Position numbers and translations under genes: made by a program. Below the pieces are notes generated by a model. That model made no database searches and was not told the origin of the DNA. It saw only the letters and a list, made by a program, of their open reading frames with translations. DNA of 64,000 bases from Heteronotia binoei (Eukaryota): the NCBI RefSeq assembly GCF_032191835.1, contig NC_083228.1:101060001-101124000 (forward strand). Direction: 5' to 3'. Shown piece after piece: positions 3,112 through 59,000 of this stretch (position 1 is its first letter; every line of letters starts with the position of its first letter).

Positions 3112-3375
3112 TTATCCATGTTTCATGCAGACCTGGCATCTGCCTATATGTCTGCGTTGTTCTTGCCCATTTTTAAGTGTCCTTGAGAAAGGAGCTGATG
3201 CAAATTGCAACTCTGGATTTACAGTAATTAACCAGAAGCTGTATTCATTTGCAAAAAACTGACATGTTCCTCGCTGACCCTGGCACTCAATAAAGGGTGC
3301 TGATCTGAAATCTTCAAGGCAGCTTCCAGTTGACATCAGAGATTGTCCACCTCCTTGGTCACCAGATCCAGTGTG
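3112..3375 (-). CDS. COL4A4: Terminal coding exon, NC1 C-terminal part (264 nt including stop)
   Basis: ttccag|CAC ACT GGA; [11 protein letters not shown]...CMKHG*; phase 0. Confidence 0.96.
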
Positions 3376-6300
3376 CTGGAAGAAACAGGCAAAAGAACTA
3401 TAAGGCATCAAAACTGTTACCTGATCCTATGCATGGTTATTCAGGAGTTAGTCTTCCTGTCAAGGCACAAGCTATAATTCATTACTTAGATGGTAATGAA
3501 CTCAGTGGTACTTCCTTATTGCCATACTTTAGCTAGGGCCGTAATTTATTAAATAATACATTTGAATATCTTTTATTGGATCAAGATGGATGAAAGCTTA
3601 TTTCAGTTATACAAATGGAAGGGTTGCTCCCAGAAGTCTATTCTTATATATTGTCTGTGGGAGAAACCCAGACATCATTAAGATAGTCCCTAGTTTTGCT
3701 ATAATTACTGAAAAAACCTTCACAGTATAAAATTGGTAAAAAAATATACTGGTGCTTAAAATTTTAGGCTGAGATTTTGTTATTACAATTCTGAATGGAT
3801 ATGTGTGAGAGAGGGAGTGAGAATTTATTTTGGTTTGTTATGATAACTCATGGGTTATTTCAAACATTCATTCATTCATACAGTTCCCACTAACTGTGTA
3901 ATGAGGCATAAGGGAATGAACCACAATTATTTTATTGAATGATAATCTGAAAAAAAAGTATAGTTTTTCAGTGATAAAATGCAGTTATCATGAAAGCAAT
4001 GTGTGGATTTTTACCAAGCCTCTGTAATGAACCAAGGCCAAAATAGTATTCATTCAGTCTTACCATCAAAAATGAATATCCTATCCAAAGACTTCTCCAG
4101 TTCAGCGGACATGGAGGAATGGATTGATCTTGACTATGAATGGCAACAGCTTGGGCAGGAGCTTCACATACAGCACATCTGCTAATGTAGGGCTGTATTT
4201 CTTCATCAGAGATGGGCATCATGGGTAAAGGAGCAGCACTTGACAACCAGTAAGATTTATCATTTCTGCTTGCATAGTAGCAGACCTGATTGATATTGCA
4301 ATAGGCAAAAGGCATGGTGCTGAATACAGAAAGACAAGATCCAGCCAAACCTAGAACAAAGGAAAACAAAAGCAAAGTTAAATGAAGATGAAGAATAGTT
4401 AAAGTCAGTCTTGTCCAACTCTGGACTATACTGCCCAGTAATGATTAACACTTAATTATTAATGGGAACTCACAGTGGCAGGTTTCCTCACAATGTATGT
4501 TGTTGCCACAAAAGCCTCGTTACATAGTAGGTAACTGCCATAGTAATGGAGTTCAATGTGCATGTAGTCTTCATCTATTAATTTTCAAGTTGGACTACTT
4601 CATAAACCAAAAGGATTGTTATCAGGATAATATGGAGGAGAGACGAATTATGTATGCCACCCTGAGTGTCTTGGAGGAAGGGAGGGATAAACATTTTACT
4701 AAATGAATAAATAAAAATTCACACCCATCTGATATTTACAGTTATGGGAAAATTTCATTTTTGACACGGGAGAGTAAAACTCACAATCTCACAGTCATTT
4801 CTTGAGGATCAAGAAATTACTACTGGAGGTAACAATCAGAAAATATACTGTTGCAGGTGGTAATTTTGCCTAGTTGAATATGGTGTAAAAACAGTAAGTT
4901 TATTGTTTATTTATTTTATTGTCTGCAAACAATCAGTTTTTCTTGGGTTGTGTGTGTGCTATATCTTTATGTACTCTTTGGCTGATTCCGCAGTCAGCTT
5001 TCTCCAGGGCAGGCTTCCGTTTCTGGGCAGAGCAAACTGGCAATTTCGTTCCAGTTGCTCTGTGCTGGCATTTTGTGCAGGGCAAACCCACGATTTGCCC
5101 TGCCACAGTGTAAACCTGAAAAAACAGGTTTACATTGTGGCGGGGCAAATCGCAGGTTTGCCCTGTGTAAAATGCCATCACGGAGCAACTGGTGTGAAAT
5201 CGCCAGTTTGCTCCGCCCAGAAACGGAAGCCTGCCCCAGAGAAAGGTGAGTGCAGAATGAGCCTGTGTGTAAAGTGCCATTAATTCACAGCAACTATCAT
5301 CACAGTTCATTACCTTCTGTCAACCCAGCAAGGCAAGAGAGAAGCAGAGGTGGTTTGCCATTCCCTTTCTCTGTAGGTGTCTTCCTTAAAAGAACCAACC
5401 CTGTTTTGAAATCTGATGAGATTAGGCTATATATTGCCTTCCTCCCATTTCTCATTGTACTCTGATACTTTCCTATAAATCTAATTATGAAATAATGGCA
5501 ACTGAAACAGGCCTTATTGATGTATTTTATATATTCCACTTGTATGAAAATACAGATGTGTTAAAATTCAAGCACTGACTCTGACGTGGCACAGTTCTGT
5601 ACCGTCTCATATATCTATTGTTAAGTTTGTTGGAAAAAATACAGTGTTTCACATGTGTGAAACCTTTACATGTTAGAGAGAACTATGAAATACAATAAAG
5701 TATGGGGAGAAATGTCATTTCTACCCAGATAAAAAGTTCACTGCTTACCAAGATCTTGATTATAGGCCTTCTCCTGTCCTTCAAGATACAGCAGACTGTA
5801 TCCAGTCCATAATTTTGCCATTCCCTCTGGACACAGTGGTTCTTGGTCTGATTGACTGTGCAGAACAAGTAAGAATCCACTAGCAGCTCTTGTTTCAGGC
5901 CCTGGTGGCCCTGGTATCCCAGTCTGGCCTGGAGGACCTTATGGAATGAAAATAAGATACATAACATCCCATTTTAAAGCAGGACATGTTTCTTTGATAA
6001 ATTAATACCTTTAGCTTCTCAGAGCAGATAAAAGGAAAGTTGTTAGGCTTCAGCGAAAGAATACTTGATCGTGTGTTGATCATTGTTAGTTTGAATGCAA
6101 GGCACTCCCTCAAACAAGTGAAAAAAGACCTTACATTATTTGACATACAGTTTTAGAGACACATGGTTTCATCTCAAGGCTGTAATAACTGGCGCAAAAA
6201 TTAAATGCAGTCGGCTGCAAAGTAGCACATCCTACCAAAGGGTGGTGAATGGTTGCAGAATGCTTACCTCGCAGCCCTGGGTATCCTTTTTCTCCCTTGT

Positions 6301-9300
6301 CCCCTTGATCACCAATGGGTCCAGGTGGCCCAGACAAGCCACTCTGACCTTGCAGACCTAGCAACCCTTCCTCTCCTTTTCTTCCTGAAATACAAAACAT
6401 TTATAATCAAAGATCACAATAATTAAACTCTGTACCTCAGCAACAGTTCACTGTGATGGTTCCCTTGTGTGAAGTGGCTCCCTTTATGTGGTTCTGCTGG
6501 GGAGTGGTCAGGAGGGGAAGGGCAAGACCATCCCTGTCAAACTGGTAGGAGAACCATCAGAAGGTCTGAGGCACTGTCTGGTTAGCAGTCCATGCTGATG
6601 TCAGCAACCTATGGTGGGAGCTACTAGCCAGACAAGAACCATGTGCTTGATTGGTATTGACCATGTCCCATTAGCTACTGCCCTCCACCATTGTGCTTTG
6701 CTTTTCCTGATTAATTACTCTACAGTGGCAACTCACCAGCAAATTGCCTCACCAGCCACTTCTACCATAACCACAAGGTTATATTATTACATCTCAAAGT
6801 ATACATTAAATAAATCAGAATTCTTCCCTGTGATATAATAATTTGATATATTTCTAGAAATAGTTGAAACTATTTTTCTTTCAAAAACAGACATTGAAAA
6901 TCAGTTCACATTCATTTGCTTCATTTGCCTGTTTATTTAAATTTAAAAACCTTATAATCTTAAAATGAGAAAACATAGTAGGAAGTATAGTTTTGCATTA
7001 AGTTCTAAAGAAAACCATCACCGGATTTTCTTAATTTTAGTAGATTTAACTGCAAGAACATGATAGGCACTGCAGTGTACATTAAAAACATAGTTAACCT
7101 CAAAAATCAAAACTGCCACCAAACTATTTTTTTTCAACCAATAGAATGCAGTAGATAGAATGTCACTCTAGGATCTGGGATACCCAGGTTCAAATCCCCA
7201 ATGGAAACCTGCTGGATGACTTGCACCAGTCATACATTCTCATCGTAACCCCCCTTGCAAGATTATTGTGAGTATATAATGGAGGAGGGAATGATATAAG
7301 TTGCTCTGGGGCCCCATTGGGAAGAAAGGTAGGGTATAAATGAAGTAAATAAGTAACATTCCAGGAAACAAATTCAAGGTTTTAAGCTAAATTTTCTTAT
7401 ACAAAATCAGCCAGTGAAATCATTACTTTTGCTAAAGTCCTACAATTGGTATGATCTCTTTGGTGAAAAGCGCAAAGGAAAATTGAATAAATGGTTAAAC
7501 TAAATGTGATAAGAAATGCAGGAACACTTAAGCACAAACAAGTCAATATGAAATTGTGTATGTTTCTGAGACTTTTGGACGCAAAAATATATACCATTGT
7601 AAGATTGGTCCCTTTTCCTCACCACACACCCTTCAGAGTCACAAAAGCTTTACCTTGAGGACCAGGGAAGCCTGGTGGTCCTGGAACTCCTATGGGACCT
7701 GGTGACCCTCTTTGGCCTAATACTCCGGGAGGCCCTGGAGTCTTGGGACATGAGGAATAATCAAGTTTTCCAGGTTCACCTAGGTCACCTGGAATATGCA
7801 ACAGCATTAAACAAGAGACAAGACAAGACAGCAAACAACTAACAATGTTAGGCACATAATTAGCAGAAATTCCACCTGATTTTGGATGGTTTTTCTACCC
7901 TTTATGTGACTACATAATTTTGACTTGCCATATATGTATGGGATGGGAAGCAGAATGCACAAGAAAATGTTACTAACACGTGGTACCCACTAGAAGCTGC
8001 TGGGACTACATGTGTTCTAATATCTTAAGAGTTCCCACTGCAACCCAGTGTTGGGAATAAACCCTTGTTTATATCTGCTGAGGACCACAGTTGGCATTAA
8101 CAGAGAGGTCTGAGCATACAGAAAAAGAAGCACACATGCAGAAATGTATTGTTTAAAAGGCACTCATCCTTCTCTATCTTACCTCTGCAACCTGGTGGGT
8201 TTGAATGCCGAGAACCAGACCATGACAGCCATTTCACATGCAGGATGAAAACAAGTATCATGCATACAGATTAGGAACAAGAATGCAATGGGAATTGTAA
8301 GAGCTTGCTGGTGGAATTGTTTTTCATCCTAATGTGATTGTTACAAAGCACATGATTATCCACCTCCAATAAGTGAATGACATGGAGAACTTCATTGCCT
8401 ACATAATCATCTAAATTTCCCAGTATAATTTTACATAGGTTTCAATGCATTTTAGTTTTTACTGCTCTTCCTCACTTTGTACTATGCTTATCAAGGCAGA
8501 GAGCTCAATTACATAATTACTGGTGTAAAAGCCATATAAATTCTTAGCCTGACGAACAGCTAAGCATGCCTTCGCTAGAAATTAGTATATCAGTTAAATG
8601 AAAAATAAGCAAATGTTAATACCAGAAACAAGCAATTCATAACTTGTTGCAGTTTTCTTCAGACTACTGTTCAGGTTTTTCATTGTCATACTACATCTGT
8701 TCCTAATGTCTTTATGAAGTATTTAATATCTAGCCAATAAAATATCCATGTGAGGTGTGGAAATATCAGATCAATATATGCTTGAAAATTTCAAATGGTT
8801 CAGAAACTGGCAGTGAGAATGATAACTAGTGTAGATACAGATATCCTGCAGCCAATCCTAAAATAACTTGAACGGCTTTCAATTCTTTGGGGTGCACAAT
8901 TCAAAATGATGATTCTTGACTTTAAAGTTCTGAATTGTCTGAGCAATGTCAGTCTCACTCCATCATCTGTTTGACTGACCTATCTCACAGGTTTGTTGTG
9001 AAGATAAAACAAGAAGGAATAACTATGTACGTTGTCTTGAATAACTTGGAGGAAGGGTGGGCTAAAAATGCCACAGACAGAGACAGACAACGGTTGACCC
9101 AGTTTTCAGAAGTGACCTGCCTCACCCATCTTGCATAGCATGTTCACATTAAGTGCCAGTTACATGTATGCAGATTTGTACAACTTTTTCATCTCTCATG
9201 ACAGCCTTATAAGGCTACTGTGAATATTATACAGTGATCTATATTTTGGGAATTGTAATATGAATACATGCACTCAGAAATGCTACTTTCATTCTACTGC

Positions 9301-12300
9301 TTATACCATCTATTGCCCTCCCCCACAATGGGCTATAAAACTACAATGAGCCAAAATATTTGTTTTTTTATCTGAAATATGTGCCTGCCCGCCTGTGTAT
9401 ATTTTTTGAGCTTTGTTTTATTTGTATATTATTGAGTCATTGCTGTATTTTAACTGTTTTATTATGACTGCAACCCGCCCTGAGCCAGTATGGGAAAGGG
9501 CGGAATATAAATCAACCAAATAAATAAAAATAAGTACAAGGTAGTGTCAAACTTATCAAGAAATACCTTTGGGACCCAGAGGTCCAGTTGATCCTCGAAA
9601 TCCTTGATCACCAAGTTCCCCTCGGGCACCCGGGAGCCCCTGTGGTCCTGGATTTCCCACTGGACCTTAACAAATTAGGATGAATTTGAATAAACACCAT
9701 AAACATGAACAATGTTTTGTTACTTGAATTTGCCATGTACTAAACTAGCAATCTCTAGCCGTACCTTTTGAACCCGGTCTCCCTTGCTTTCCTTGAACAC
9801 CTTTATTTCCTGGATTTCCAGGTAGACCAGGAACCCCAGGTAGGCCAGGGATCCCACAGTCACCTGGATCTCCTTTAACAAAAACAGTCTTTCCCTGCGG
9901 TCCAGTTTCTCCAGGAAGACCTGAAACAAAACTAGATACTATTAATAATAAATTTCCAAAATCTTATGAGATCTGAGAGAAAAAGGAATTTCCATAGGAA
10001 CCCAGATCCAACCACAGATGGTGCATGTAGAAACAGATTTATGAGCAAATATGTTCTGCTGGATTTCAAAACATACATACTAAAGTGCTGTATGTTTCTT
10101 TCAAACACTGGGTTGCATCTAGTGATCTAACAGTGAGCAGAGATTTTTCCTGCATTCCTCTCTCTGCAACAGTCTCATCCAATCCAAGGAAACTGCTGAG
10201 TCAGGACCTGCAATGATTAGTAGCCATGTGAGTTGGAGTCTACAATGTGGATGGGAAAAGAGACAACTTCACTCTAGATCTTTGATCCTTGAGGCCACAG
10301 ATTTCTGAATCTACTAGTTGGAGATGCATATGTAGTTGGACTAGGACCATTGGATTGGGAAGTAAAAGCAAACATATATTTGGTGCGATCAGTTTTGACA
10401 GTGCTAAGCAGAAGGGAAATCAGTACAGCCATTCTTCCCTCATCTTTGGTTTGCTGATTTCACTCATAGACTTCAGAAGTGCATCAAATTGTTCTAGAAC
10501 TCAACAGGCGAAAAGATTCTTCTGCAGAATCATTCACAAGGGGAAAACCTCCAAACATATTTTGATATGGCTCAAACAGGTAATGACAATCATAATCTGC
10601 CTTCTGACAAATTCTGGGGAAGGTGGTGTGCTTTTGTAAAGGTTTTTTTAGACACTATTAGATAGTAGTTGGTGGTGTAGGTTTTATACTGTTACAGAGG
10701 TGAAATTGTATTTCTGATGTTCATGGAATTACACATAATACAGAACTAGAATGTTAAAAATTAATGCAAATCTGCAGTAGAAGAGAAGTACATGATCAAT
10801 ATATACTTGCCTTGTCCTGACCCACATGGTTCAGGCTGACCTGACATTGGAAGCTAAGCAAGGTCACCTCTGCTGTATTTGGATGGGAGATCACCAAGGA
10901 AGGCCAGAGTAACTTCGCAGAGGCAGGCAATGGCAAACCACCTCTAAATGTCTCTTGCCTTGAAAACCCTATTTGGTCACCATGTCAGCTGCAGCTTGAT
11001 GGCACTCACACACACATGTGCTTTTCTTGGCTGAAGCCACCCCAAATAATGCTTCTTTGAATCATCATTATTAGGTAAGGTTTACAGTCTAACCTCTCAT
11101 GCAAAGCTAGAAAACAAGAATGTCAAGCTACTGAAAAGAATAAATTACCTATCAAAGGTTCTCCTCTTCCTAGTATCTTCAGTCACCCTAATCCGTCACA
11201 TATAGACTGTATGCAAGCTTGGGTCTTCTATAATGGACTTTTATTTTACTGCCTATGTGAATGCAAATGGCTGAAACTCCTGTATCTAGCACTCGTGAGT
11301 GCCATGAAAACTGAATCACTGACAGATAAGAGTATAACTAGACCAGACATTGGGGGCCCTGACCATGTCTTCCATCTGTTTAAATTTCTATTCATATTAA
11401 TTGTTTCTGTATGAAGTATGTGTGTGAGGAGAGAAAGCAGCATGGTATAGCCTGATCTTGTCAGATCTCAAAGACAAACAGGGTAGACACTTGAAAGTGA
11501 GACCACCAAGGAAGACTTTGCAAAGGAAAGCAAACTACCTCTGCTTTTCAGTAGTTTTGAAGCTTCTTGCTGGGGTTGCCACAAGTTGGCCACAATTTGG
11601 CAATACTTTATACACACACATGGGGAGTGTGTAAGGAAAAGACCGGAACTGTGGCATTTGGGAAGGGGGGGGGGTCGAACTCTTCCTTCCACACTGTTTT
11701 TCTGATGTTCCCTCTCTCCAAACTGGTATGTGCACTGACAGAAAATAATGTTTTCCCTTTGTTAAACTGCAGTCCAGTCCCAGTCCAATTACACCCCAAT
11801 TCCTTGTCCTGGTATATCAACAGACATGAGATCCAGGCATATCCTATTAATTTAGTCCTGAGCCTAAGTTAGTGATCTGTTTGATTAAATATTTTCATAG
11901 AAAATTAGTACCTCTGATGCCATCCAAACCAGCAGGGCCTTGATCACCTGGAGGCCCAGGTGGTGCATCTCCACATGGCTGTCCAATAGGTCCTGCAGGC
12001 CCAGGGACCCCTGGCTTGCCTGTAAGAAGCAAGTTGATCATTTTATATTTCAGAGTAGATATAAATATGTTTAATACTGTTTATGTTTAAGTCAATATGC
12101 CTGTCATTACCCAATGTTTTGTACATTCCAGGTTATGTTTCTGTGACAGTGCATTAGATTTTCATCACCTAAAATGCATTTCTTCCCTAGGCAGTGTGTG
12201 CACTGTGGCTGTTATGTGACATGTAGTTATGAGGGTATCAAGAACCTATTGGCTATAATTTCATTAGTGGCAAATGAAATACTTCACACCAACCCATGCC

Positions 12301-18300: not shown

Positions 18301-21300
18301 TTGGCTAAATGTTAGGCAAGAGATATATGGCTAGTGTGCAGCAGCTGACTCCAACATCAGTAAATATTAAGGATTAATCTTTGGAATCTAATATGCTGCT
18401 GATATCTCTCTTGATTCTTGGCTTATTTAACCATGATTGATGGTTCTGTTTACTTTGCTTTCTAACTTCTGCCAACAATCCATTACAACGACAACACTTG
18501 TAAGTCTATAATTGAAGCAGTCACAGTTCTGTGCTGCTAGATACGAGCTGAATTTGCTGCAATGGAAGTCAGCCATTATTTGCTACATTTTACAGCACAG
18601 TACTGTTTGAAACTAAGAACATAAGAACATAAGAGAAGCCATGTTGGATCAGGCCAACGGCCCATCAAGTCCAACACTCTGTGTCACACAGTGGCAAAAA
18701 ATGTTATATACACACATACACTGTGGCTAATAGCCACTGATGGACCTGTGCTCCATATTTTTATCTAAACCCCTCTTGAAGGTGGCTATACTTGTGGCCG
18801 CCACCACCTCCTGTGGCAGTGAATTCCACATGTTAATCACCCTTTGGGTGAAGAAGTACTTCCTTTTATCCGTCTTAACCTGTCTGCTCAGCAATTTCAT
18901 CGAATGCCCACGAGTTCTTGTATTGTGAGAAAGGGAGAAAAGTACTTCTTTCTCTACTTTCTCCATTCCATGCATTATCTTGTAAACCTCTATCATGTCA
19001 CCCCGCAGTCGACGTTTCTCCAAGCTAAAGAGTCCCAAGCGTTTCAACCTTTCTTCATAGGGAAAGTGCTCCAGCCCTTTAATCATTCTAGTTGCCCTTC
19101 TCTGCACCTTCTCTAAAGCTATAATATCCTTTTTGAGGTGCGGCGACCAGAACTGCACACAGTACTCCAAATGAGACCGCACCATCGATTTATACAGGGG
19201 CATTATGATACTGGCTGATTTGTTTTCAATTCCCTTCCTAATAATTCCCAGCATGGCATTGGCCTTTTTTATTGCAAACGCACACTGTCTTGACACTTTC
19301 AGTGAGTTATCTATCATGACCCCAAGATCTCTCTCTTGATCAGTCTCTGCCAGTTCACACCCCATCAACTTGTATTTGTAGCTGGGATTCTTAGCCCCAA
19401 TGTGCATTACTTTGCACTTGGCCACATTGAACCGCATCTGCCACGTTGACGCCCACTCACCCAGCCTCAACAGATCCCTTTGGAGTTCCTCACAATCCTC
19501 TCTGGTTCTCACCACCCTGAACAATTTAGTGTCATCCGCAAACTTGGCCACTTCACTGCTCACTCCGAACTCTAAATCATTTATGAACAAGTTAAAAAGC
19601 ATGGGACCCAGTACCGAGCCCTGCGGCACCCCACTGCTTACCGTCCTCCACTGCGAAGACTGCCCATTTATACTCACTCTCTGCTTCCTATTACTCAGCC
19701 AGTTTTTGATCCACAAGAGGACCTGTCCTTTTACTCCATGATTCTCAAGCTTTCTAAGGAGCCTTTGATGAGGAACTTTATCAAAAGCTTTCTGGAAGTC
19801 AAGGTAAACAACATCTATCGGGTCTCCTTTGTCCACATGTTTGTTCACCCCCTCAAAGAAATGCAACAGGTTAGTGAGGCAAGATCTTCCCTTGCAGAAC
19901 CCATGCTGAGTCTTCCTCAATAACCCGTGTTCATCAATGTGCCTACTCATTCTGTCCTTGATAATGGTTTCTACCAACTTTCCCGGTATTGAAGTCAGAC
20001 TGACTGGCCTGTAGTTTCCCGGATCTCCTCTGGAACCTTTTTTAAAGATGGGGGTGACATTTGCTACCTTCCAGTCCTCAGGAATGGAGGCAGATTTCAA
20101 TGAAAGATTACAGATTTTTGTTAGAAGATCCACAAGTTCAACTTTGAGTTCCTTCAGAACTCTCGGATGTATGCCATCCGGACCCGGTGACTTATTAGTT
20201 TTTAATTTGTCTATCAGTTGTAGGACCTCCTCATTTGTCACCTCAATCTGACTCAGGTCTTTCAACACCCCTTCCAAAATTAGTGGTTCTGGGGCGGGCA
20301 AAAAGTTCTCGTCTTCTACAGTGAAGACGGAGGCAAAAAATTCATTTAGCTTTTCAGCCATTTCCCTATCCTCCTTCAGTAATCCTTTTACCCCATGGTC
20401 ATCCAAGGGCCCCACTGCCTCCCTGGCTGGTTTCCTACTTCTAATATATTTGAAGAAAGTTTTATTGTTGGTCTTTATGTTTTTTGCAATATGCTCCTCA
20501 TAGTCCCTTTTTGCCTGCCTGATCACAGTCTTGCATTTGATTTGCCACAGCCTGTGTTCCCTTTTACTAATCTCACTTGGACTGGTTTTCCACCGCTTAA
20601 AGGAGTCCTTCTTACCTTTTACAGCTTCCATTACTTTATTTGTTAACCACGCAGGCCTTTTCTTATGCCTGTTTGTGCCTTTCCTAACTTGTGGTATGTA
20701 TTTTATCTGAGCTTCTAGGATTATAGTTTTAAATAGCGTCCAAGCTTTCTCAAGGGTTTTGACCGTATGTACCTTTCCTTGCCTTATTTAAACTAGCCTT
20801 ATTTAAATATATGTGACCATTTACTTCAAGGATAACTCAAAGAAGTACGGTTTCAGGACTGGACCATTAATTATAGATATGAGGAACACAATTTTAAAAC
20901 AGGTGTGTTAGGCATCCCTCATAATACCATTCCCTTATATTTAAAAATGGTGTAAATGAGCACCATTGTTTTAGTGCCTAAAAATAATGAATTCATTTGA
21001 CTAACAAAAGTTTTCATATAAACACACAATAAACTAATTGGGGGAAAACAGACATGACAGAGACCATGAGATCTCTAACTGTAAAATGTATCTCACAACG
21101 TCCCAGTTTGTACCAAGATCATGCAGAGAAGGAAGAGACTTCATTTACTTTACAGTTTTTAAATAAATCAGACACAAGGTAGTTCACATACATTTAAAAA
21201 CAAATACAAATAGTTTAACCCTTCAATCTTGGTTTTACTAACTGAAATTCCCCCCAACACAGAAAAGTTTTAGTACTTTAAAGAGAAAAACTTGTCCTTT

Positions 21301-27300: not shown

Positions 27301-30300
27301 GGGTCCTCCACGGGATTTAATCTGGCACTGGCTGGGGGGATGAGGAAATGAAGACTATATTCAGGAGAACTGCACTGCTGTATTTTTATTTATTTATTTT
27401 AGGGGACGGGAAAGTCTCCTGGCTCTACTCCCAACGTCTCCTGGCTCCACCCCAAGGCTCCAGATATTTTCTGAGTTGCACCTGGCAACCCTAACAAATT
27501 CACGTAAACCTGTTTCGTTGCTTCACAAGTGGCTGGGATCAGGTCATTTGGGGATTTGGAGCATCTTCAGTTCCCATTACACAAGCCATCTCAGATATAG
27601 ATTTCAAATATAATGTATTAAGTGGTCTGGAATAAGCATATTGTAAGTATTCCTGTTCTCCTTTCCTATGACAATTACAGGTATTTGTCCAACACAGGCT
27701 GGAGAGCAACATAACATTTTTATTAGGTGGTAGCATAGACCCTACGGCCACTTTATAAAACAAATATGGTTGTAGGGTTGCCAGTTCTGGGCTAGGAAAT
27801 ACCTGGAGATTTTCAGGGTACAGCCTGAGGAAGCCAGGGTTTGGGGAGGGGAGGGGCTTCAATGGGGTCTGATGCCATATTGTCCACAACCCAAAGTGAC
27901 CATTTTCTCCAGGTGAACTGACCTTGGTCACCTGGAAATCAGTTGTAATAATGGAAGATCTCCAGCCACCACCTGAAAGTTGGCAACCCTATGTTGACCC
28001 ATTAAAGTATGGGGAGGTGAAGGTGTGGAGCTGCCAGATACTGCGTCAGGCAATTGGTTCATCTAATCCAGCACTGTCTCTGAATTCTTTGGAATAGGTG
28101 TTTCCCAGCCCTGATACTGGAGAAGCCAGGGACTGAACTGGGAACCTTCTTGATACACACTACAGAATAGATAAGGCTTTTTTAAAAAGTAAAAATATTT
28201 ATCCTGTACATAACTTTGAATCCATAAGAGAAAAACTACTGACAATTAAAAGACTATAAAAGACATTACAAAATGTATACATAGAGTAAATACATAATAA
28301 CCCTAACCCCTTCATATGTTATGATATGCACAGAAGACATCCAGCATTCATGTGGTGAATATGTCTGCCACATAAAGCTGAACCAGTCATACCTTAACAA
28401 TTTAAGGATCAAAAGCCTGTTAGCCATAAATATGTGACGTCATAAATATGTCACAAAATCTGCCAACAAATGAAAATCCAGTAAAGGAAAATAAGCAGGT
28501 GAGTAATTTAGTCAACCTGTTTTTATTACAAAATAACCAGAAACACTGTCACCTGGCAATCCTTGATTTCCTACAGGACCTCTCTTCCCAGGCTGGCCAA
28601 TGTGAGGAGACTGATCACCTCTGCTACCTGTACAAGTTAAAAATGGAGACTGCTCATAAGCGAGATATATACCATACCCAATAGGTGAACAAGTTTCGCA
28701 CTTTATGTTAACAAAAATATATACATGGCCACAATATCTCCAAAACTGTGGATGACTGCTCCCCCCCCACCCCCCGAACAGTATAAAGGAAGCAGTCAGA
28801 GCCCTGCCACAGGAGGAGGAATCATAAATTTCCCTTCTATGGAAATTTCTACTGGATCCAACACATTTTGTTTTTTTCAGACCTCCAAACACCATTTAAA
28901 AATTACTTTCATATCAGGCCCTCCAACATAGCTTGTCAAAAAGTGCATTGTTTTGAATTTTTAATTGCTTTGCATTTTGATTTTTAAAGGATTTATCCTG
29001 GGGGGGCTCTTTCCAGATTGTTCCTGTTTTAAGTTTATTTCCTGGCATTCTTCTGGTTCTGATTTTACAGTTCCGTGGTTATTTTGAAGGTTTTTTTTTT
29101 TTTTGCATTGTGTTTTCTGGGGTAGTGATTTTTAGGGTATTCCTATTAGTTTTGAAAATTTGTTCTGAAAGAAATTTCTGGTTAGGTGCTAATAATAGTT
29201 AAATGTAGGTGATTATTTAGGGATTAAAAATACAAATTTCAGTTTAGGATTTAGTGTTTCTTTTCCCTCCCCCAAATGAGGCTTTTGTTGGCCAGTTTGG
29301 TATAGTGGTTAAGTGTGTGGACTCTTATCTGGGAGAATCGGGTTTGATTCCCCACTCCTCTACTTGTAGCTGCTGGAATGGCCTTGAGTCAGCCATAGCT
29401 CTTGCAGGAGTTGTCCTTGAAAGGGCAGCTGCTGTAAAAGCGCTCTCAGCCCCACCTACCTCACAGGGTGTCTGTAGTGGGGGTTAGGGTAAAGGAGACT
29501 GTGACCGCTCTGAGATTCAGAATATAGGGCAGGATATAAATCCAATATCTTCTTCTAAAATAAGAATAAGTCAGTGGTTTAAAAATAATAACTGGAGCTT
29601 AGGGCCAATTTGAAAAAAAAATTAGGCTGGCCTGAGCAGGGCCGGATCTAGGGAGGGGGCAGAGGGGGGTGCTTGCCCCGGGCACCGATGGAGGGAGGGC
29701 GCCGAATTGACTATGGAGTCCATTGTATTCTATGAGACCATGAGATAGAATGGCCCATAAGGGGGTGCCATTTTTTAATTTTGCCTCCCCTCAACATGTA
29801 GATTCGGTCCTGGGCCTGAGCTTCAAAACAATTGAAACCAGGTGCATTTGGGGGGAAAGGCAACTGCAGATTAGCAGCGGGTGGGAAAAGTCAATGGCAG
29901 CAGGTTAATAAGTCAGTTTCAACAGCAAGTTTGTTAGTGCTCTGAGTCAGAGTACAGTGTAGCCTAGTGTAGCACTGGTTAAAGTTGCCAGGTTCTCCTG
30001 GGCCACCAGGGGATGGCCAGATTCAGGTTGGGAGACTCCTAGGGATTTGAGGATGAAGCCTGTGGAGGACAGGAACCTCAGTGAGGTACAATATCATAGA
30101 GCAGGGGTGGCCAACGGTAGCTCTCCAGATGTTTTTTGCCTTCAACTCCCATCAGACCCAGCCAGCATGGCCAATGGGTTGGGGCTGATGGGAGTTGTAG
30201 GCAAAAAACATCTGGAGAGCTACCGTTGGCCACCCCTGTCATAGAGTACACCATCCAAAGCATCCATTTTCTTCAGAGGAATTGATCTCTGTAGTCTGGA

Positions 30301-56062: not shown

Positions 56063-59000
56063 TGTGGCTAATAGCCACTGATGGACCTCTGCTCCATATT
56101 TTTATCTAACCTCCTCTTGAAGGTGGCCATGCTTGTGGCCGCCACCACCTCCTGTGGCAGTGAATTCCACATGTTAATCACCCTTTGGGTGAAGAAGTAC
56201 TTCCTTTTATCCGTTTTAACCTTTCTGCTCAGCAATTTCATGGAATGCCCACGAGTTCTTGTATTGTGAGAAAGGGAGAAAAGTATTTCTTTCTCTACTT
56301 TCTCCATCCCATGCATTATCTTGTAAACCTCTATCATGTCACCCCGCAGTCGACGTTTCTCCAAGCTAAAGAGCCCTAAGCGTTTCAACCTTTCTTCATA
56401 GGGAAAGTGTTCCAGCCCTTTAATCATTCTAGTTGCCCTTTTCTGGACTTTCTCCAATGCTATAATATCCTTTTTGAGGTGCGGCGACCAGAACTGCACA
56501 CAGTACTCCAAATGAGACCGCACCATCGATTTATGCATCGATTTTATATGATACTGGCTGATTTGTTTTCAATTCCCTTCCTAATAATTCCCAGCATGGC
56601 GTTGGCCTTTTTTATTGCAAACGAACACTGTCTTGACATTTTCAGTGAGTTATCTACCATGACCCCAAGATCTTTCTCATGGTCAGTCTCTGCCAGTTCA
56701 CACCCCATCAACTTGTATTTGTAGCTGGGATTCTTGGCCCCAATGTGCATTACTTTGCACTTGGCCACATTGAACCGCATCTGCCACGTTGACGCCCACT
56801 CACCCAGCCTCAACAGATCCCTTTGGATTTCCTCACAATCCTCTCTGGTTCTCACCACCCTGAACAATTTTGTGTCATCCGCAAACTTGGCCACTTCACT
56901 GCTCACTCTCAACTCTAAATCATTTATGAACAAGTTAAAGAGCATGGGACCCAGTACCGAGCCCTGCGGCACCCCACTGCTTACCGTCCTCCACTGCGAA
57001 GACTGCCCATTTATACTCACTCTCTGCTTCCTATTACTCAGCCAGTTTTTGATCCACAAGAGGACCTGTCCTTTTACTCCATGACTCTCAAGCTTTCTAA
57101 GGAGCCTTTGATGAGGAACTTTATCAAAAGCTTTCTGGAAGTCAAGGTAAACAACATCTATCGGGTCTCCTTTGTCCACATGTTTGTTCACCCCCTCAAA
57201 GAAATGTAGCAGGTTAGTGAGGCATGATCTTCCCCTACAGAACCCATGCTGAGTCTTCCTCAATAACTCGTGTTCATCAATGTGCCTACTCATTCTGTCC
57301 TTGATAATGGTTTCTACCAACTTCCCCGGTATTGAAGTCAGACTGACTGGCCTGTAATTTCCTGGATCTCCTCTGGAACCCTTTTTAAAGATGGGGGTGA
57401 CATTTGCTACCTTCCAGTCCTCAGGAACGGAGGCAGATTTCAATGAAAGATTACAGATTTTTGTTAGAAGATCCACAAGTTCAACTTTGAGTTCGGTGAC
57501 TTATTAGTTTTTTATTTGTCTATTAGTTGTAGGACCTCCTCTTTTGTCACCTCAATCTGACTCAGGTCTTTCAACACCCCTTCCAACATTAGTGGTTCAG
57601 GGGTGGGCAAAAAGTTCTCATCTTCCACAGTGAAGACGGAGGCAAAAAATGCATTCAGCTTCTCAGCCATTTCCCTATCCTCCTTCAGTAATCCTTTTAC
57701 CCCATGGTCATCCAAGGGCCCCACTGCCTCCCTGGCTGGTTTCCTACTTCTAATATATGTGAAGAAATTTTTATTGTTGGTCTTTATGTTTTTTGCAATA
57801 TGCTCCTCATAGTCCTTCTTTGCCTGCCTGATCACAGTCTTGCATTTGATTTGCCACAGCCTGTGTTCCCTTTCATTAATCTCACTTGGACTGGTTTTCC
57901 ACCATTTAAAGGAGTCTTTCTTACCTTTAACAGCTTCCATTACTTTGTTTGTTAACCATGCAGGCCTTTTCTTATACCTTTTTGTGCCTTTCCTAACTTG
58001 TGGTATGTATTTTATCTGAGCTTCTTGGATTATAGTTTTAAATAGTGTCCAAGCTTCCCCAAGGGTTTTGACCGTATTTACCTTTCCTTTCAGTTTCCTC
58101 CTCACATGCCTCCTCATCTCAGAGAATTTACCCCTTTTAAAGTTAAACGTGGTTGTGGCGGTCTTTTTGGGCAACTCCCATGTGAATATAATGTGTACAG
58201 ATTATAATCTGGATCTGAAGAAGTGTGCATGCACACAAAATCTTATAGTTTGAATAAAACTTTCTTAGTCTTAAAAGTGCCACTGGCTCAAACTTTGTTC
58301 TGCCGCTTCAGACCAACATGGCAACCACTTGAATCTATAATAGGAAAGAACTGAACTCACAATTTCCCCCCTATTTAAAATTAATTTTCCTTCTTTAGAT
58401 GACTTTTCTTTTTGTGTTATCAATTCCCCAAAAGGCTGTAGCGTCACTACAGTGACTTTGACTAAGAAGCAGTCTTTTTGCCTATAATGGAATATGATGC
58501 TACTTTGTGAAGGTGTAAATCCCCCACCTCCCACCTTCTTCCAAATCTCTAACCATTTACTGGTTGTCCCTTCCTAAATGCAAGAATATAGATCCCATCA
58601 AAACCCTCCCTTTTCATTCTCTTTCAAAGGTTTGGGAAGGGGTAAGAGATGAAAGAAAGATATAAATTGCAGTAATACAGGAATTCCTGGTGTATTCATT
58701 TGCATATGGACCCATCCATGAAACATGAATTTGGTCTCTCAAATGTGCTGGAACTCTGCCCTTATGTTTCCTTTGTTTGGAAACTTTGCCTGGAAATTTA
58801 AATTTTTAAAGCATCTTTTAAGTCCTTTCTCCCCTTTTAAATAAAGTCTTTCTTCCCACTGCAAACTAGATTTCTGATATCCTGGAAAATTTAACACACA
58901 CCCTTCTAAATTCTTCTATATACCAATGACAGATCTAAATCCCAATGCTTTTATTGAGTTGTGCACAGCAGCAATCTTTTCTCCTTGCACAATGCCCCAC

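What the first reader, a model, noticed from the sequence alone, without database searches (positions are those of the whole stretch)
8130..8275. 9-nt Gly-Cys-Arg microexon flanked by three TGCATG (Rbfox) motifs
Seen: at 8183-8191 (minus) ccaccag|GTTGCAGAG|gtaagata gives a strong donor, phase 1 on both sides and exactly one Gly-X-Y triplet. TGCATG occurs at 8135-8140 (downstream) and at 8237-8242 and 8259-8264 (upstream). Inclusion changes GPK-GDL to GPK-GCR-GDL, adding a cysteine and turning KGD into RGD. Established: TGCATG is the Rbfox element, and cysteines in the alpha3/alpha4/alpha5 helices support network disulfides. From memory, human COL4A4 has a 9-nt exon at about this position encoding Gly-Pro-Arg. 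Inference: a regulated microexon that toggles a cross-linking cysteine in the glomerular basement membrane chain. Automated annotation usually misses exons this small.
Basis: partly seen in the sequence, partly recalled or inferred. Interest (0 to 1): 0.75.

Follow-up and report, generated by a model that had tools for sequence, protein, structure and literature searches.

The report
Conserved 9-base exon of COL4A4
The 9-base stretch is very likely a real coding exon, the reptile counterpart of the known 9-base exon 43 of the human basement-membrane collagen gene COL4A4. It is therefore an ordinary conserved exon, and nothing here shows it is an Rbfox-controlled switch.

Summary
GTTGCAGAG sits at 8191..8183 on the minus strand, with AG before and GTAAGA after, in phase 1 on both sides. 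It lies in the intron between two Gly-X-Y exons (9665..9567 and 7788..7654) of a gene whose NC1 exons match collagen alpha-4(IV) best.

Comparative evidence says it is a real exon.
- The orthologous intron holds exactly one matching 9-base exon in a turtle, with identical letters (Gly-Cys-Arg).
- Four birds each have one, always Gly-Phe-Ile, differing only at synonymous positions.
- In a mammal, the desman, the one well-signalled candidate in the 4.1 kb before exon 44 encodes Gly-Ser-Arg.
- AG and GTAAG are invariant in all seven sequences.
- The exon with about 110 bases upstream is the only alignable island in the intron.
- Published human intron coordinates (c.4081+120, c.4217-24), plus the 126-base exon 44 of two non-human mammals, leave exactly c.4082-4090 for a separate 9-base exon 43 in the standard transcript.

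The 'Rbfox-regulated toggle' does not. Only the downstream TGCATG recurs in the turtle, one upstream site recurs in one bird, and the mammal has none within 150 bases.

This is an already known kind of feature and of low interest.

The parts
9567..9665 (-). Upstream coding exon (99 nt, phase 1 to phase 1), orthologue of human COL4A4 exon 42. It encodes [34 protein letters not shown].
   Evidence: tblastn finds the same exon in birds. The human exon ending at c.4081 and containing c.3990 is called exon 42 (PMC4267773; PMC8977549).
8192..8300 (-). Conserved upstream intronic block, including the acceptor AG at 8193-8192. It contains motifs shared with turtle and birds: CATTSCATTC, ATG..TGAAACTTG and CCTGC..AATGGC. 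It is probably a splicing enhancer or recognition region for the tiny exon (inference).
   Evidence: It is the only significant intron-versus-intron HSP against three birds (window 8300..8178, E about 1e-11) and against L002 (E 4e-8). Against the turtle the match is 73% over 192 nt, E 4e-26. Alignment.
8183..8191 (-). 9-nt microexon GTTGCAGAG, phase 1/1, adding Gly-Cys-Arg. It is the orthologue of human COL4A4 exon 43.
   Evidence: The turtle L018 9037-9045 has the identical 9-mer. Birds have GATTCATAG, GTTTTATAG, GGTTCATAG and GTTTCATAG, all Gly-Phe-Ile. The desman has GTTCCAGAG, Gly-Ser-Arg. Summary table.
8177..8182 (-). Donor site gtaaga. GTAAG is invariant in all seven species compared.
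8259..8264 (-). TGCATG at -72. It aligns with TGCATG in one bird (L002), but with TACATG in the other birds and TATATG in the turtle.
8237..8242 (-). TGCATG at -50. Only TGC is conserved here: the turtle has TGCTTG and birds have TGCAC.
8135..8140 (-). TGCATG at +44. It is conserved as TGCATG in the turtle; birds have TTCATG, and the desman has no GCATG within 150 nt.
7654..7788 (-). Downstream coding exon (135 nt, phase 1 to phase 1) with the interruption [11 protein letters not shown]. It is the orthologue of human COL4A4 exon 44, the exon carrying Arg1377.
   Evidence: Orthologous ORF fragments are P0001, P0002, P0018 and P0019. The mammalian exon is 126 nt with CGA at exon nt 39.
3115..4348 (-). 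The two NC1-domain exons used to identify the chain type (about 4096-4348 and 3115-3372).
   Evidence: The best single-chain PDB match is human alpha-4(IV) NC1, 5nb1: 173 and 152 bits, against 160 and 133 for alpha-2.

Best explanation
The 9 bases at 8191..8183 (minus strand) are a genuine coding exon of the COL4A4 orthologue. They are the counterpart of human COL4A4 exon 43 (c.4082-4090). The exon is spliced between the 99-nt exon ending at 9567 and the 135-nt exon starting at 7788. It adds one collagen triplet, Gly-Cys-Arg here, without changing the frame. The exon has been maintained since at least the amniote ancestor. Its recognition probably depends on the invariant AG and GTAAG sites and on a conserved block of about 110 nt just upstream. 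It is most likely included in the main transcript, as in the human reference mRNA, and is not used as a tissue switch. Shown: the sequence anatomy, the orthology and the coding-type conservation. Inferred: actual inclusion in this species' mRNA, constitutive use, and the enhancer role of the upstream block.
For: The gene is COL4A4. The candidate is the only AG|G-N7-G|GT in its intron. Exactly one such candidate lies in the orthologous intron of each of four birds and a turtle. The desman has one well-signalled candidate upstream of exon 44. AG and GTAAG are invariant in all seven. The three variable positions among birds are all synonymous: Gly GGA/GGT/GGG and Phe TTC/TTT. The turtle 9-mer is identical to the window's. 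The microexon region is the sole significant HSP between otherwise unalignable introns. Human evidence: exons end at c.3973 and c.4081 and start at c.4217 and c.4523 (PMC4267773). c.3990 is in exon 42. Exon 44 in two non-human mammals is 126 nt, and its CGA codon falls at c.4129 (Arg1377) only if the exon starts at c.4091. This leaves c.4082-4090 as a separate 9-nt exon 43.
Against: The acceptor is only moderate here (61% pyrimidines at -20..-3, against 78-83% in birds). The human exon size is deduced from coordinates and mammalian orthologues, not read from an exon table. The link of Arg1377 with exon 44 and c.4129 partly rests on my own knowledge. A teleost alpha-4-like gene could not be shown to share the exon.
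Confidence: 0.87

Rival explanations
1. It is a real exon but alternatively included. Rbfox proteins would bind the flanking TGCATG sites and set inclusion by tissue, toggling a cysteine and an RGD.
For: Three TGCATG lie within 130 nt around the exon, which is unusual locally. The downstream site, the position at which Rbfox usually promotes inclusion, is conserved in the turtle, which shares the Gly-Cys-Arg exon. Skipping stays in frame. COL4A5 has precedent 9-bp alternative exons, 41A and 41B (PMC7160674).
Against: Neither upstream site is conserved as GCATG across turtle and birds. Three of four birds have no GCATG within 200 nt, and the desman has none within 150 nt. The human exon is in the reference transcript. 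Two sites upstream and one downstream give opposing predictions under the usual Rbfox position rule. No RNA data exist.
Confidence: 0.1
2. It is a chance AG...GT pseudo-exon in a 1.8-kb intron and is never spliced in.
For: The bare pattern is common: roughly 18 intronic hits on the minus strand and 10 on the plus strand in 64 kb. The acceptor is only moderate.
Against: The 9-mer is identical in a turtle. A single homologous candidate recurs in every orthologous sauropsid intron examined. Splice dinucleotides are invariant, changes among birds are synonymous only, and human cDNA coordinates require 9 extra bases at this junction.
Confidence: 0.02
3. The conserved island is an intronic regulatory element, such as an enhancer or structured RNA, and the exon-like 9-mer is incidental to it.
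For: Conservation extends about 110 nt upstream of the 9-mer, further than splice signals alone need.
Against: The consensus fold is weak (-7.9 kcal/mol) with an unfavourable covariation term. In the desman, conservation collapses to the 9-mer and its splice sites, as expected for an exon and not for an enhancer.
Confidence: 0.01

Closest known systems
Human COL4A4 exon 43 (c.4082-4090 of NM_000092, 9 nt)
   Same: It lies in the same gene, at the same junction between the exon ending at c.4081 and the exon carrying Arg1377. It has the same length and the same phase 1/1, and adds one Gly-X-Y triplet. The non-human mammalian version, GTTCCAGAG in the desman, differs from the window's 9-mer by one base.
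   Different: The residues differ: Cys-Arg here and in the turtle, Ser-Arg in the desman, Phe-Ile in birds. The human residues were not verified. The neighbouring exons are 99 and 135 nt here, against 108 and 126 nt in human and other mammals.
COL4A5 exons 41A and 41B (two 9-bp alternatively spliced exons; Martin and Tryggvason 2001, cited in PMC7160674)
   Same: They are 9-bp, phase-1 exons, each adding one Gly-X-Y triplet to a type IV collagen chain of the alpha3-alpha4-alpha5 network. Skipping them stays in frame.
   Different: They belong to a different gene of the other chain class. By my own estimate they sit about 195 residues before NC1, against about 105 here. Their tissue-dependent alternative use is documented, whereas none is shown for this exon.
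Rbfox-dependent alternative exons with flanking (U)GCAUG
   Same: TGCATG is present within 75 nt on both sides in this species.
   Different: The motifs are not conserved as a set, and neither alternative use nor Rbfox dependence is shown.

Membership tests
Orthologue of COL4A4 exon 43 (9-nt Gly-X-Y exon) | The host gene is COL4A4. | tested here: met
   The NC1 exons score best against human alpha-4(IV) NC1 (5nb1), above alpha-2, alpha-1, alpha-3 and alpha-5. Alpha-6 is not among the solved chains. Alpha-2-like and alpha-6-like proteins carry different motifs from the window and the alpha-4 set.
Orthologue of COL4A4 exon 43 (9-nt Gly-X-Y exon) | It lies in the intron between the exon 42 and exon 44 orthologues, three coding exons before the collagen/NC1 junction exon. 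| tested here: met
   Exon order in the window and in the bird, turtle and mammal loci.
Orthologue of COL4A4 exon 43 (9-nt Gly-X-Y exon) | It is 9 nt long, phase 1 on both sides, with a first base G completing a Gly codon, no stop, and AG/GT borders. | tested here: met
Orthologue of COL4A4 exon 43 (9-nt Gly-X-Y exon) | The exon and its flanks are homologous to orthologues, with coding-type conservation. | tested here: met
   The 9-mer is identical in the turtle, the substitutions among four birds are synonymous only, and it is the only alignable island in the intron.
Orthologue of COL4A4 exon 43 (9-nt Gly-X-Y exon) | The human reference transcript carries 9 nt from a separate exon at this junction. 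| tested here: met
   c.4081+120 and c.4217-24 (PMC4267773), plus the 126-nt mammalian exon 44, plus the exon numbering of c.3990. This is an indirect deduction, and no exon table could be read.
Orthologue of COL4A4 exon 43 (9-nt Gly-X-Y exon) | It is included in mRNA of this species. | not testable with these tools
Rbfox-regulated alternative exon | (U)GCAUG lies within about 300 nt of the exon. | tested here: met
   Sites at -72, -50 and +44.
Rbfox-regulated alternative exon | The motif is conserved in orthologous introns. | tested here: not met
   Only the +44 site recurs in the turtle and only the -72 site in one bird. Three birds and the desman lack nearby GCATG.
Rbfox-regulated alternative exon | Inclusion varies by tissue and depends on Rbfox. 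| not testable with these tools
   No RNA data were available.
COL4A5 41A/41B-type alternative 9-bp collagen IV exons | A 9-bp, phase-1 exon encoding a single triplet in a type IV collagen gene. | tested here: met
COL4A5 41A/41B-type alternative 9-bp collagen IV exons | Alternative inclusion is documented. | not testable with these tools
   No RNA data were available. The human COL4A4 exon is in the reference transcript.

The most novel reading that the evidence does not exclude
In non-avian reptiles (gecko and turtle), this ancient exon carries Cys-Arg, which with the next exon also forms an RGD. Its inclusion could be tuned by the downstream TGCATG that both lineages share. The alpha-4 chain would then gain or lose a cross-linking cysteine by tissue, a regulation lost in birds and mammals.
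Probability: 0.08. Interest if true: 0.45.

Novelty: already known. Interest (0 to 1): 0.2.

Why it matters
The main use is for annotation. A 9-base exon can split or shorten gene models. The public Chelydra serpentina annotation breaks COL4A4 into two models exactly at this exon, and several database fragments from lizards, snakes and birds skip the region. The exon should be added when this genome is annotated. Biologically it shows that a single-triplet exon of COL4A4 has been kept for roughly 300 million years, with free variation in its X and Y residues. That variation includes a cysteine in gecko and turtle that could add one disulfide site to the alpha3-alpha4-alpha5 network. The result does not open a new question.

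Tried and rejected
- Boye et al. 1998, the original COL4A4 exon table, is not held. Text searches for '9 bp' and 'microexon' with COL4A4 gave nothing relevant.
- The one search of protein representatives, with exon 44, returned only ORF fragments and unrelated collagens, and no full-length alpha-4 chain.
- Database alpha-4 fragments of 377-403 aa (Podarcis, Pseudonaja, Corvus, parrots) skip many collagenous exons and say nothing about the junction.
- Contigs L001, L007 and L008 (other species; L008 is about 90% identical to the window) and the mammalian L015 and L017 end before reaching the microexon.
- The arowana alpha-4-like contig has a different or unresolved exon layout.
- A conserved RNA structure around the exon is not supported.
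- A second neat 9-nt candidate at 27931..27923 lies in repeat-like sequence and was set aside.
All searches used single exons by reference.
- No human contig was fetched. A human PDB protein (P0026) was used only to recognise and avoid human-derived hits. Primer sequences seen in a paper were not used.

Full report
**What is in the sequence.** On the minus strand the window reads ...acccaccag|GTTGCAGAG|gtaagata.... The 9-mer occupies 8191..8183, preceded by AG and followed by GTAAGA. The upstream exon ends ...GGT CCC AAA G at 9567. The downstream exon begins GT GAC CTA at 7788 and ends CAA G|gtaaag at 7654. Both junctions split a glycine codon after its first base. TGCATG occurs on this strand at 8259-8264, 8237-8242 and 8135-8140.

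**Chance expectation.** The pattern AG|G-N7-G|GT without a stop is not rare. There are 74 on the minus strand, most inside real Gly-X-Y exons and roughly 18 intronic, and 10 on the plus strand. The pattern alone would therefore not be convincing. This candidate is, however, the only one in its intron and the only intronic one followed by GTAAG. TGCATG is not enriched in the window as a whole (49 against 44 +/- 7.5). Three copies within 130 nt is unusual: about 0.02-0.04 for any such cluster on the strand and 3.5e-5 for a fixed region.

**The gene.** More than thirty Gly-X-Y exons with interruptions run along the whole minus strand, ending in NC1 exons. Those exons match human alpha-4(IV) NC1 (5nb1) better than alpha-2, -1, -3 or -5. 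They also carry the alpha-4 motifs that separate them from alpha-2-like and alpha-6-like proteins. The gene is the COL4A4 orthologue. The candidate lies three coding exons before the collagen/NC1 junction exon. I did not test that.

**Related sequences.** The exon-44 peptide retrieved ORF fragments from other species, and the NC1 exon retrieved many more. Their contigs gave the orthologous region in these species:
- an unnamed bird (L002);
- a second unnamed bird (L009);
- Dasyornis broadbenti (L013);
- Thryothorus ludovicianus (L016);
- the turtle Chelydra serpentina (L018);
- the desman Galemys pyrenaicus (L019).

In each sauropsid, the intron between the exon 42 and exon 44 orthologues contains exactly one AG|G-N7-G|GT candidate. 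In the desman, one such candidate with a good acceptor and a GTAAG donor lies 2.85 kb before exon 44.

| Species | 9-mer | Encodes |
|---|---|---|
| Window | GTTGCAGAG | Gly-Cys-Arg |
| Chelydra (turtle) | GTTGCAGAG | Gly-Cys-Arg |
| Bird L002 | GATTCATAG | Gly-Phe-Ile |
| Bird L009 | GTTTTATAG | Gly-Phe-Ile |
| Dasyornis | GGTTCATAG | Gly-Phe-Ile |
| Thryothorus | GTTTCATAG | Gly-Phe-Ile |
| Galemys (desman) | GTTCCAGAG | Gly-Ser-Arg |

- The three positions that vary among the birds are all synonymous.
- The turtle 9-mer is identical to the window's, and the desman differs by one base.
- AG and GTAAG are invariant in all seven.
- Intron-against-intron BLAST between the window and each bird gives a single significant match, always window 8300..8178 against the bird microexon region (E 4e-8 to 1e-11).
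- Against the turtle the match is 73% over 192 nt (E 4e-26).
- In the desman, similarity shrinks to the 9-mer and its splice sites.

This is the signature of a maintained coding exon, not of a chance match.

**Human counterpart.** No human sequence was fetched. Published polymorphisms c.3973+34, c.4081+120, c.4217-24 and c.4523-8 (PMC4267773), and the variant c.4217-1G>A (PMC11883019), fix exon ends at c.3973 and c.4081 and exon starts at c.4217 and c.4523.
- c.3990 is assigned to exon 42 of NM_000092.5 (PMC8370956; PMC8977549), so exon 42 is c.3974-4081.
- In two non-human mammals the exon with ...DSCPRIPG... is 126 nt.
- Its CGA codon is at exon nucleotide 39. That equals c.4129, the first base of codon 1377, only if the exon begins at c.4091.
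- That Arg1377 (CGA) is the site of a recurrent nonsense mutation assigned to exon 44 is my own knowledge.
- The 126 nt then end at c.4216, matching the next exon start at c.4217.

Nine bases, c.4082-4090, remain for a separate exon 43. Its residues (Gly-Pro-Arg) were not verified. The original exon table (Boye et al. 1998) is not held.

**Regulation.** In the six-way alignment:
- The -72 TGCATG aligns with TGCATG in one bird, but with TACATG in three birds and TATATG in the turtle.
- The -50 site keeps only TGC in the other species.
- The +44 site is TGCATG in the turtle and TTCATG in birds.
- The desman has no GCATG within 150 nt.

What is conserved upstream is a set of other short blocks (CATTSCATTC, ATG..TGAAACTTG, CCTGC..AATGGC). 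I take these, by inference, as the recognition or enhancer region such a small exon needs. A consensus fold of the region is weak and has no covariation support. With the human exon in the reference transcript, the simplest reading is constitutive or near-constitutive inclusion. The joined spliced model was deliberately not searched.

**Comparison and verdict.** The closest known thing is human COL4A4 exon 43, of which this is the orthologue. COL4A5 exons 41A and 41B (PMC7160674) are a mechanistic parallel in another chain, and their alternative use is documented. The cysteine, and the RGD formed with the next exon, are shared by the window species and the turtle. They are absent in birds and the desman, so they are lineage states of freely varying X and Y positions. 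The finding is a correct identification of an ordinary, already known kind of exon. Its practical value is for annotation, because the Chelydra annotation splits COL4A4 into two models at exactly this point.

Noticed in passing
L018:6576-10147 (Chelydra serpentina, GCA_018859375.1): The public annotation splits COL4A4 into two gene models, a 1384-aa product ending at 6740 and a 331-aa product starting at 10001. The unannotated 9-nt exon at 9037-9045 lies in the gap between them.
   Followed up: partly
window 57411-58081 and 20068-20772, minus strand: Three pseudo-exon patterns recur with nearly identical flanks and spacing (116 nt, then 546 or 580 nt). This shows a repeated element of at least 700 nt in two different introns of the gene, in the same orientation.
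   Followed up: no
window 27923-27931, minus strand: This is another tidy 9-nt candidate, tttccag|GTGACCAAG|gtcagt (Gly-Asp-Gln). It lies in sequence that looks like an interspersed repeat. Conservation was not tested.
   Followed up: no
window 8245-8252 and 8190-8197 (alignment A9, columns 81-86 and 147-152): The conserved upstream block (CCTGAA in turtle and most birds, CATGAT in the window) can pair with the microexon's acceptor (TTCAGG, or ACCAGG in the window). No compensatory changes support it.
   Followed up: partly
L019:10001-10957 (Galemys pyrenaicus): The database protein named 'Collagen alpha-4(IV) chain' (P0188, 318 aa) translates directly from 957 unspliced bases. It is a read-through of two NC1 exons and the intron between them, not a true product.
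   Followed up: no
P0143, P0144, P0148, P0149 (Corvus, Podarcis, Pseudonaja database fragments): These short alpha-4 isoform entries jump from far-upstream collagenous exons straight to the NC1 junction exon. They look like faulty models.
   Followed up: no
L020:1125-1288 (Scleropages formosus): In this teleost alpha-4-like gene, the motif GDPGEGGKPGCPG sits inside one 164-nt exon. The exon layout around the microexon position may therefore differ in fishes. The contig is too short upstream to decide.
   Followed up: partly
window 7789-8000 versus L008:200-416: A contig from another sequencing run is about 90% identical to the window for some 215 nt upstream of exon 44 and then diverges abruptly. 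This suggests an insertion or deletion in one of two closely related species.
   Followed up: no
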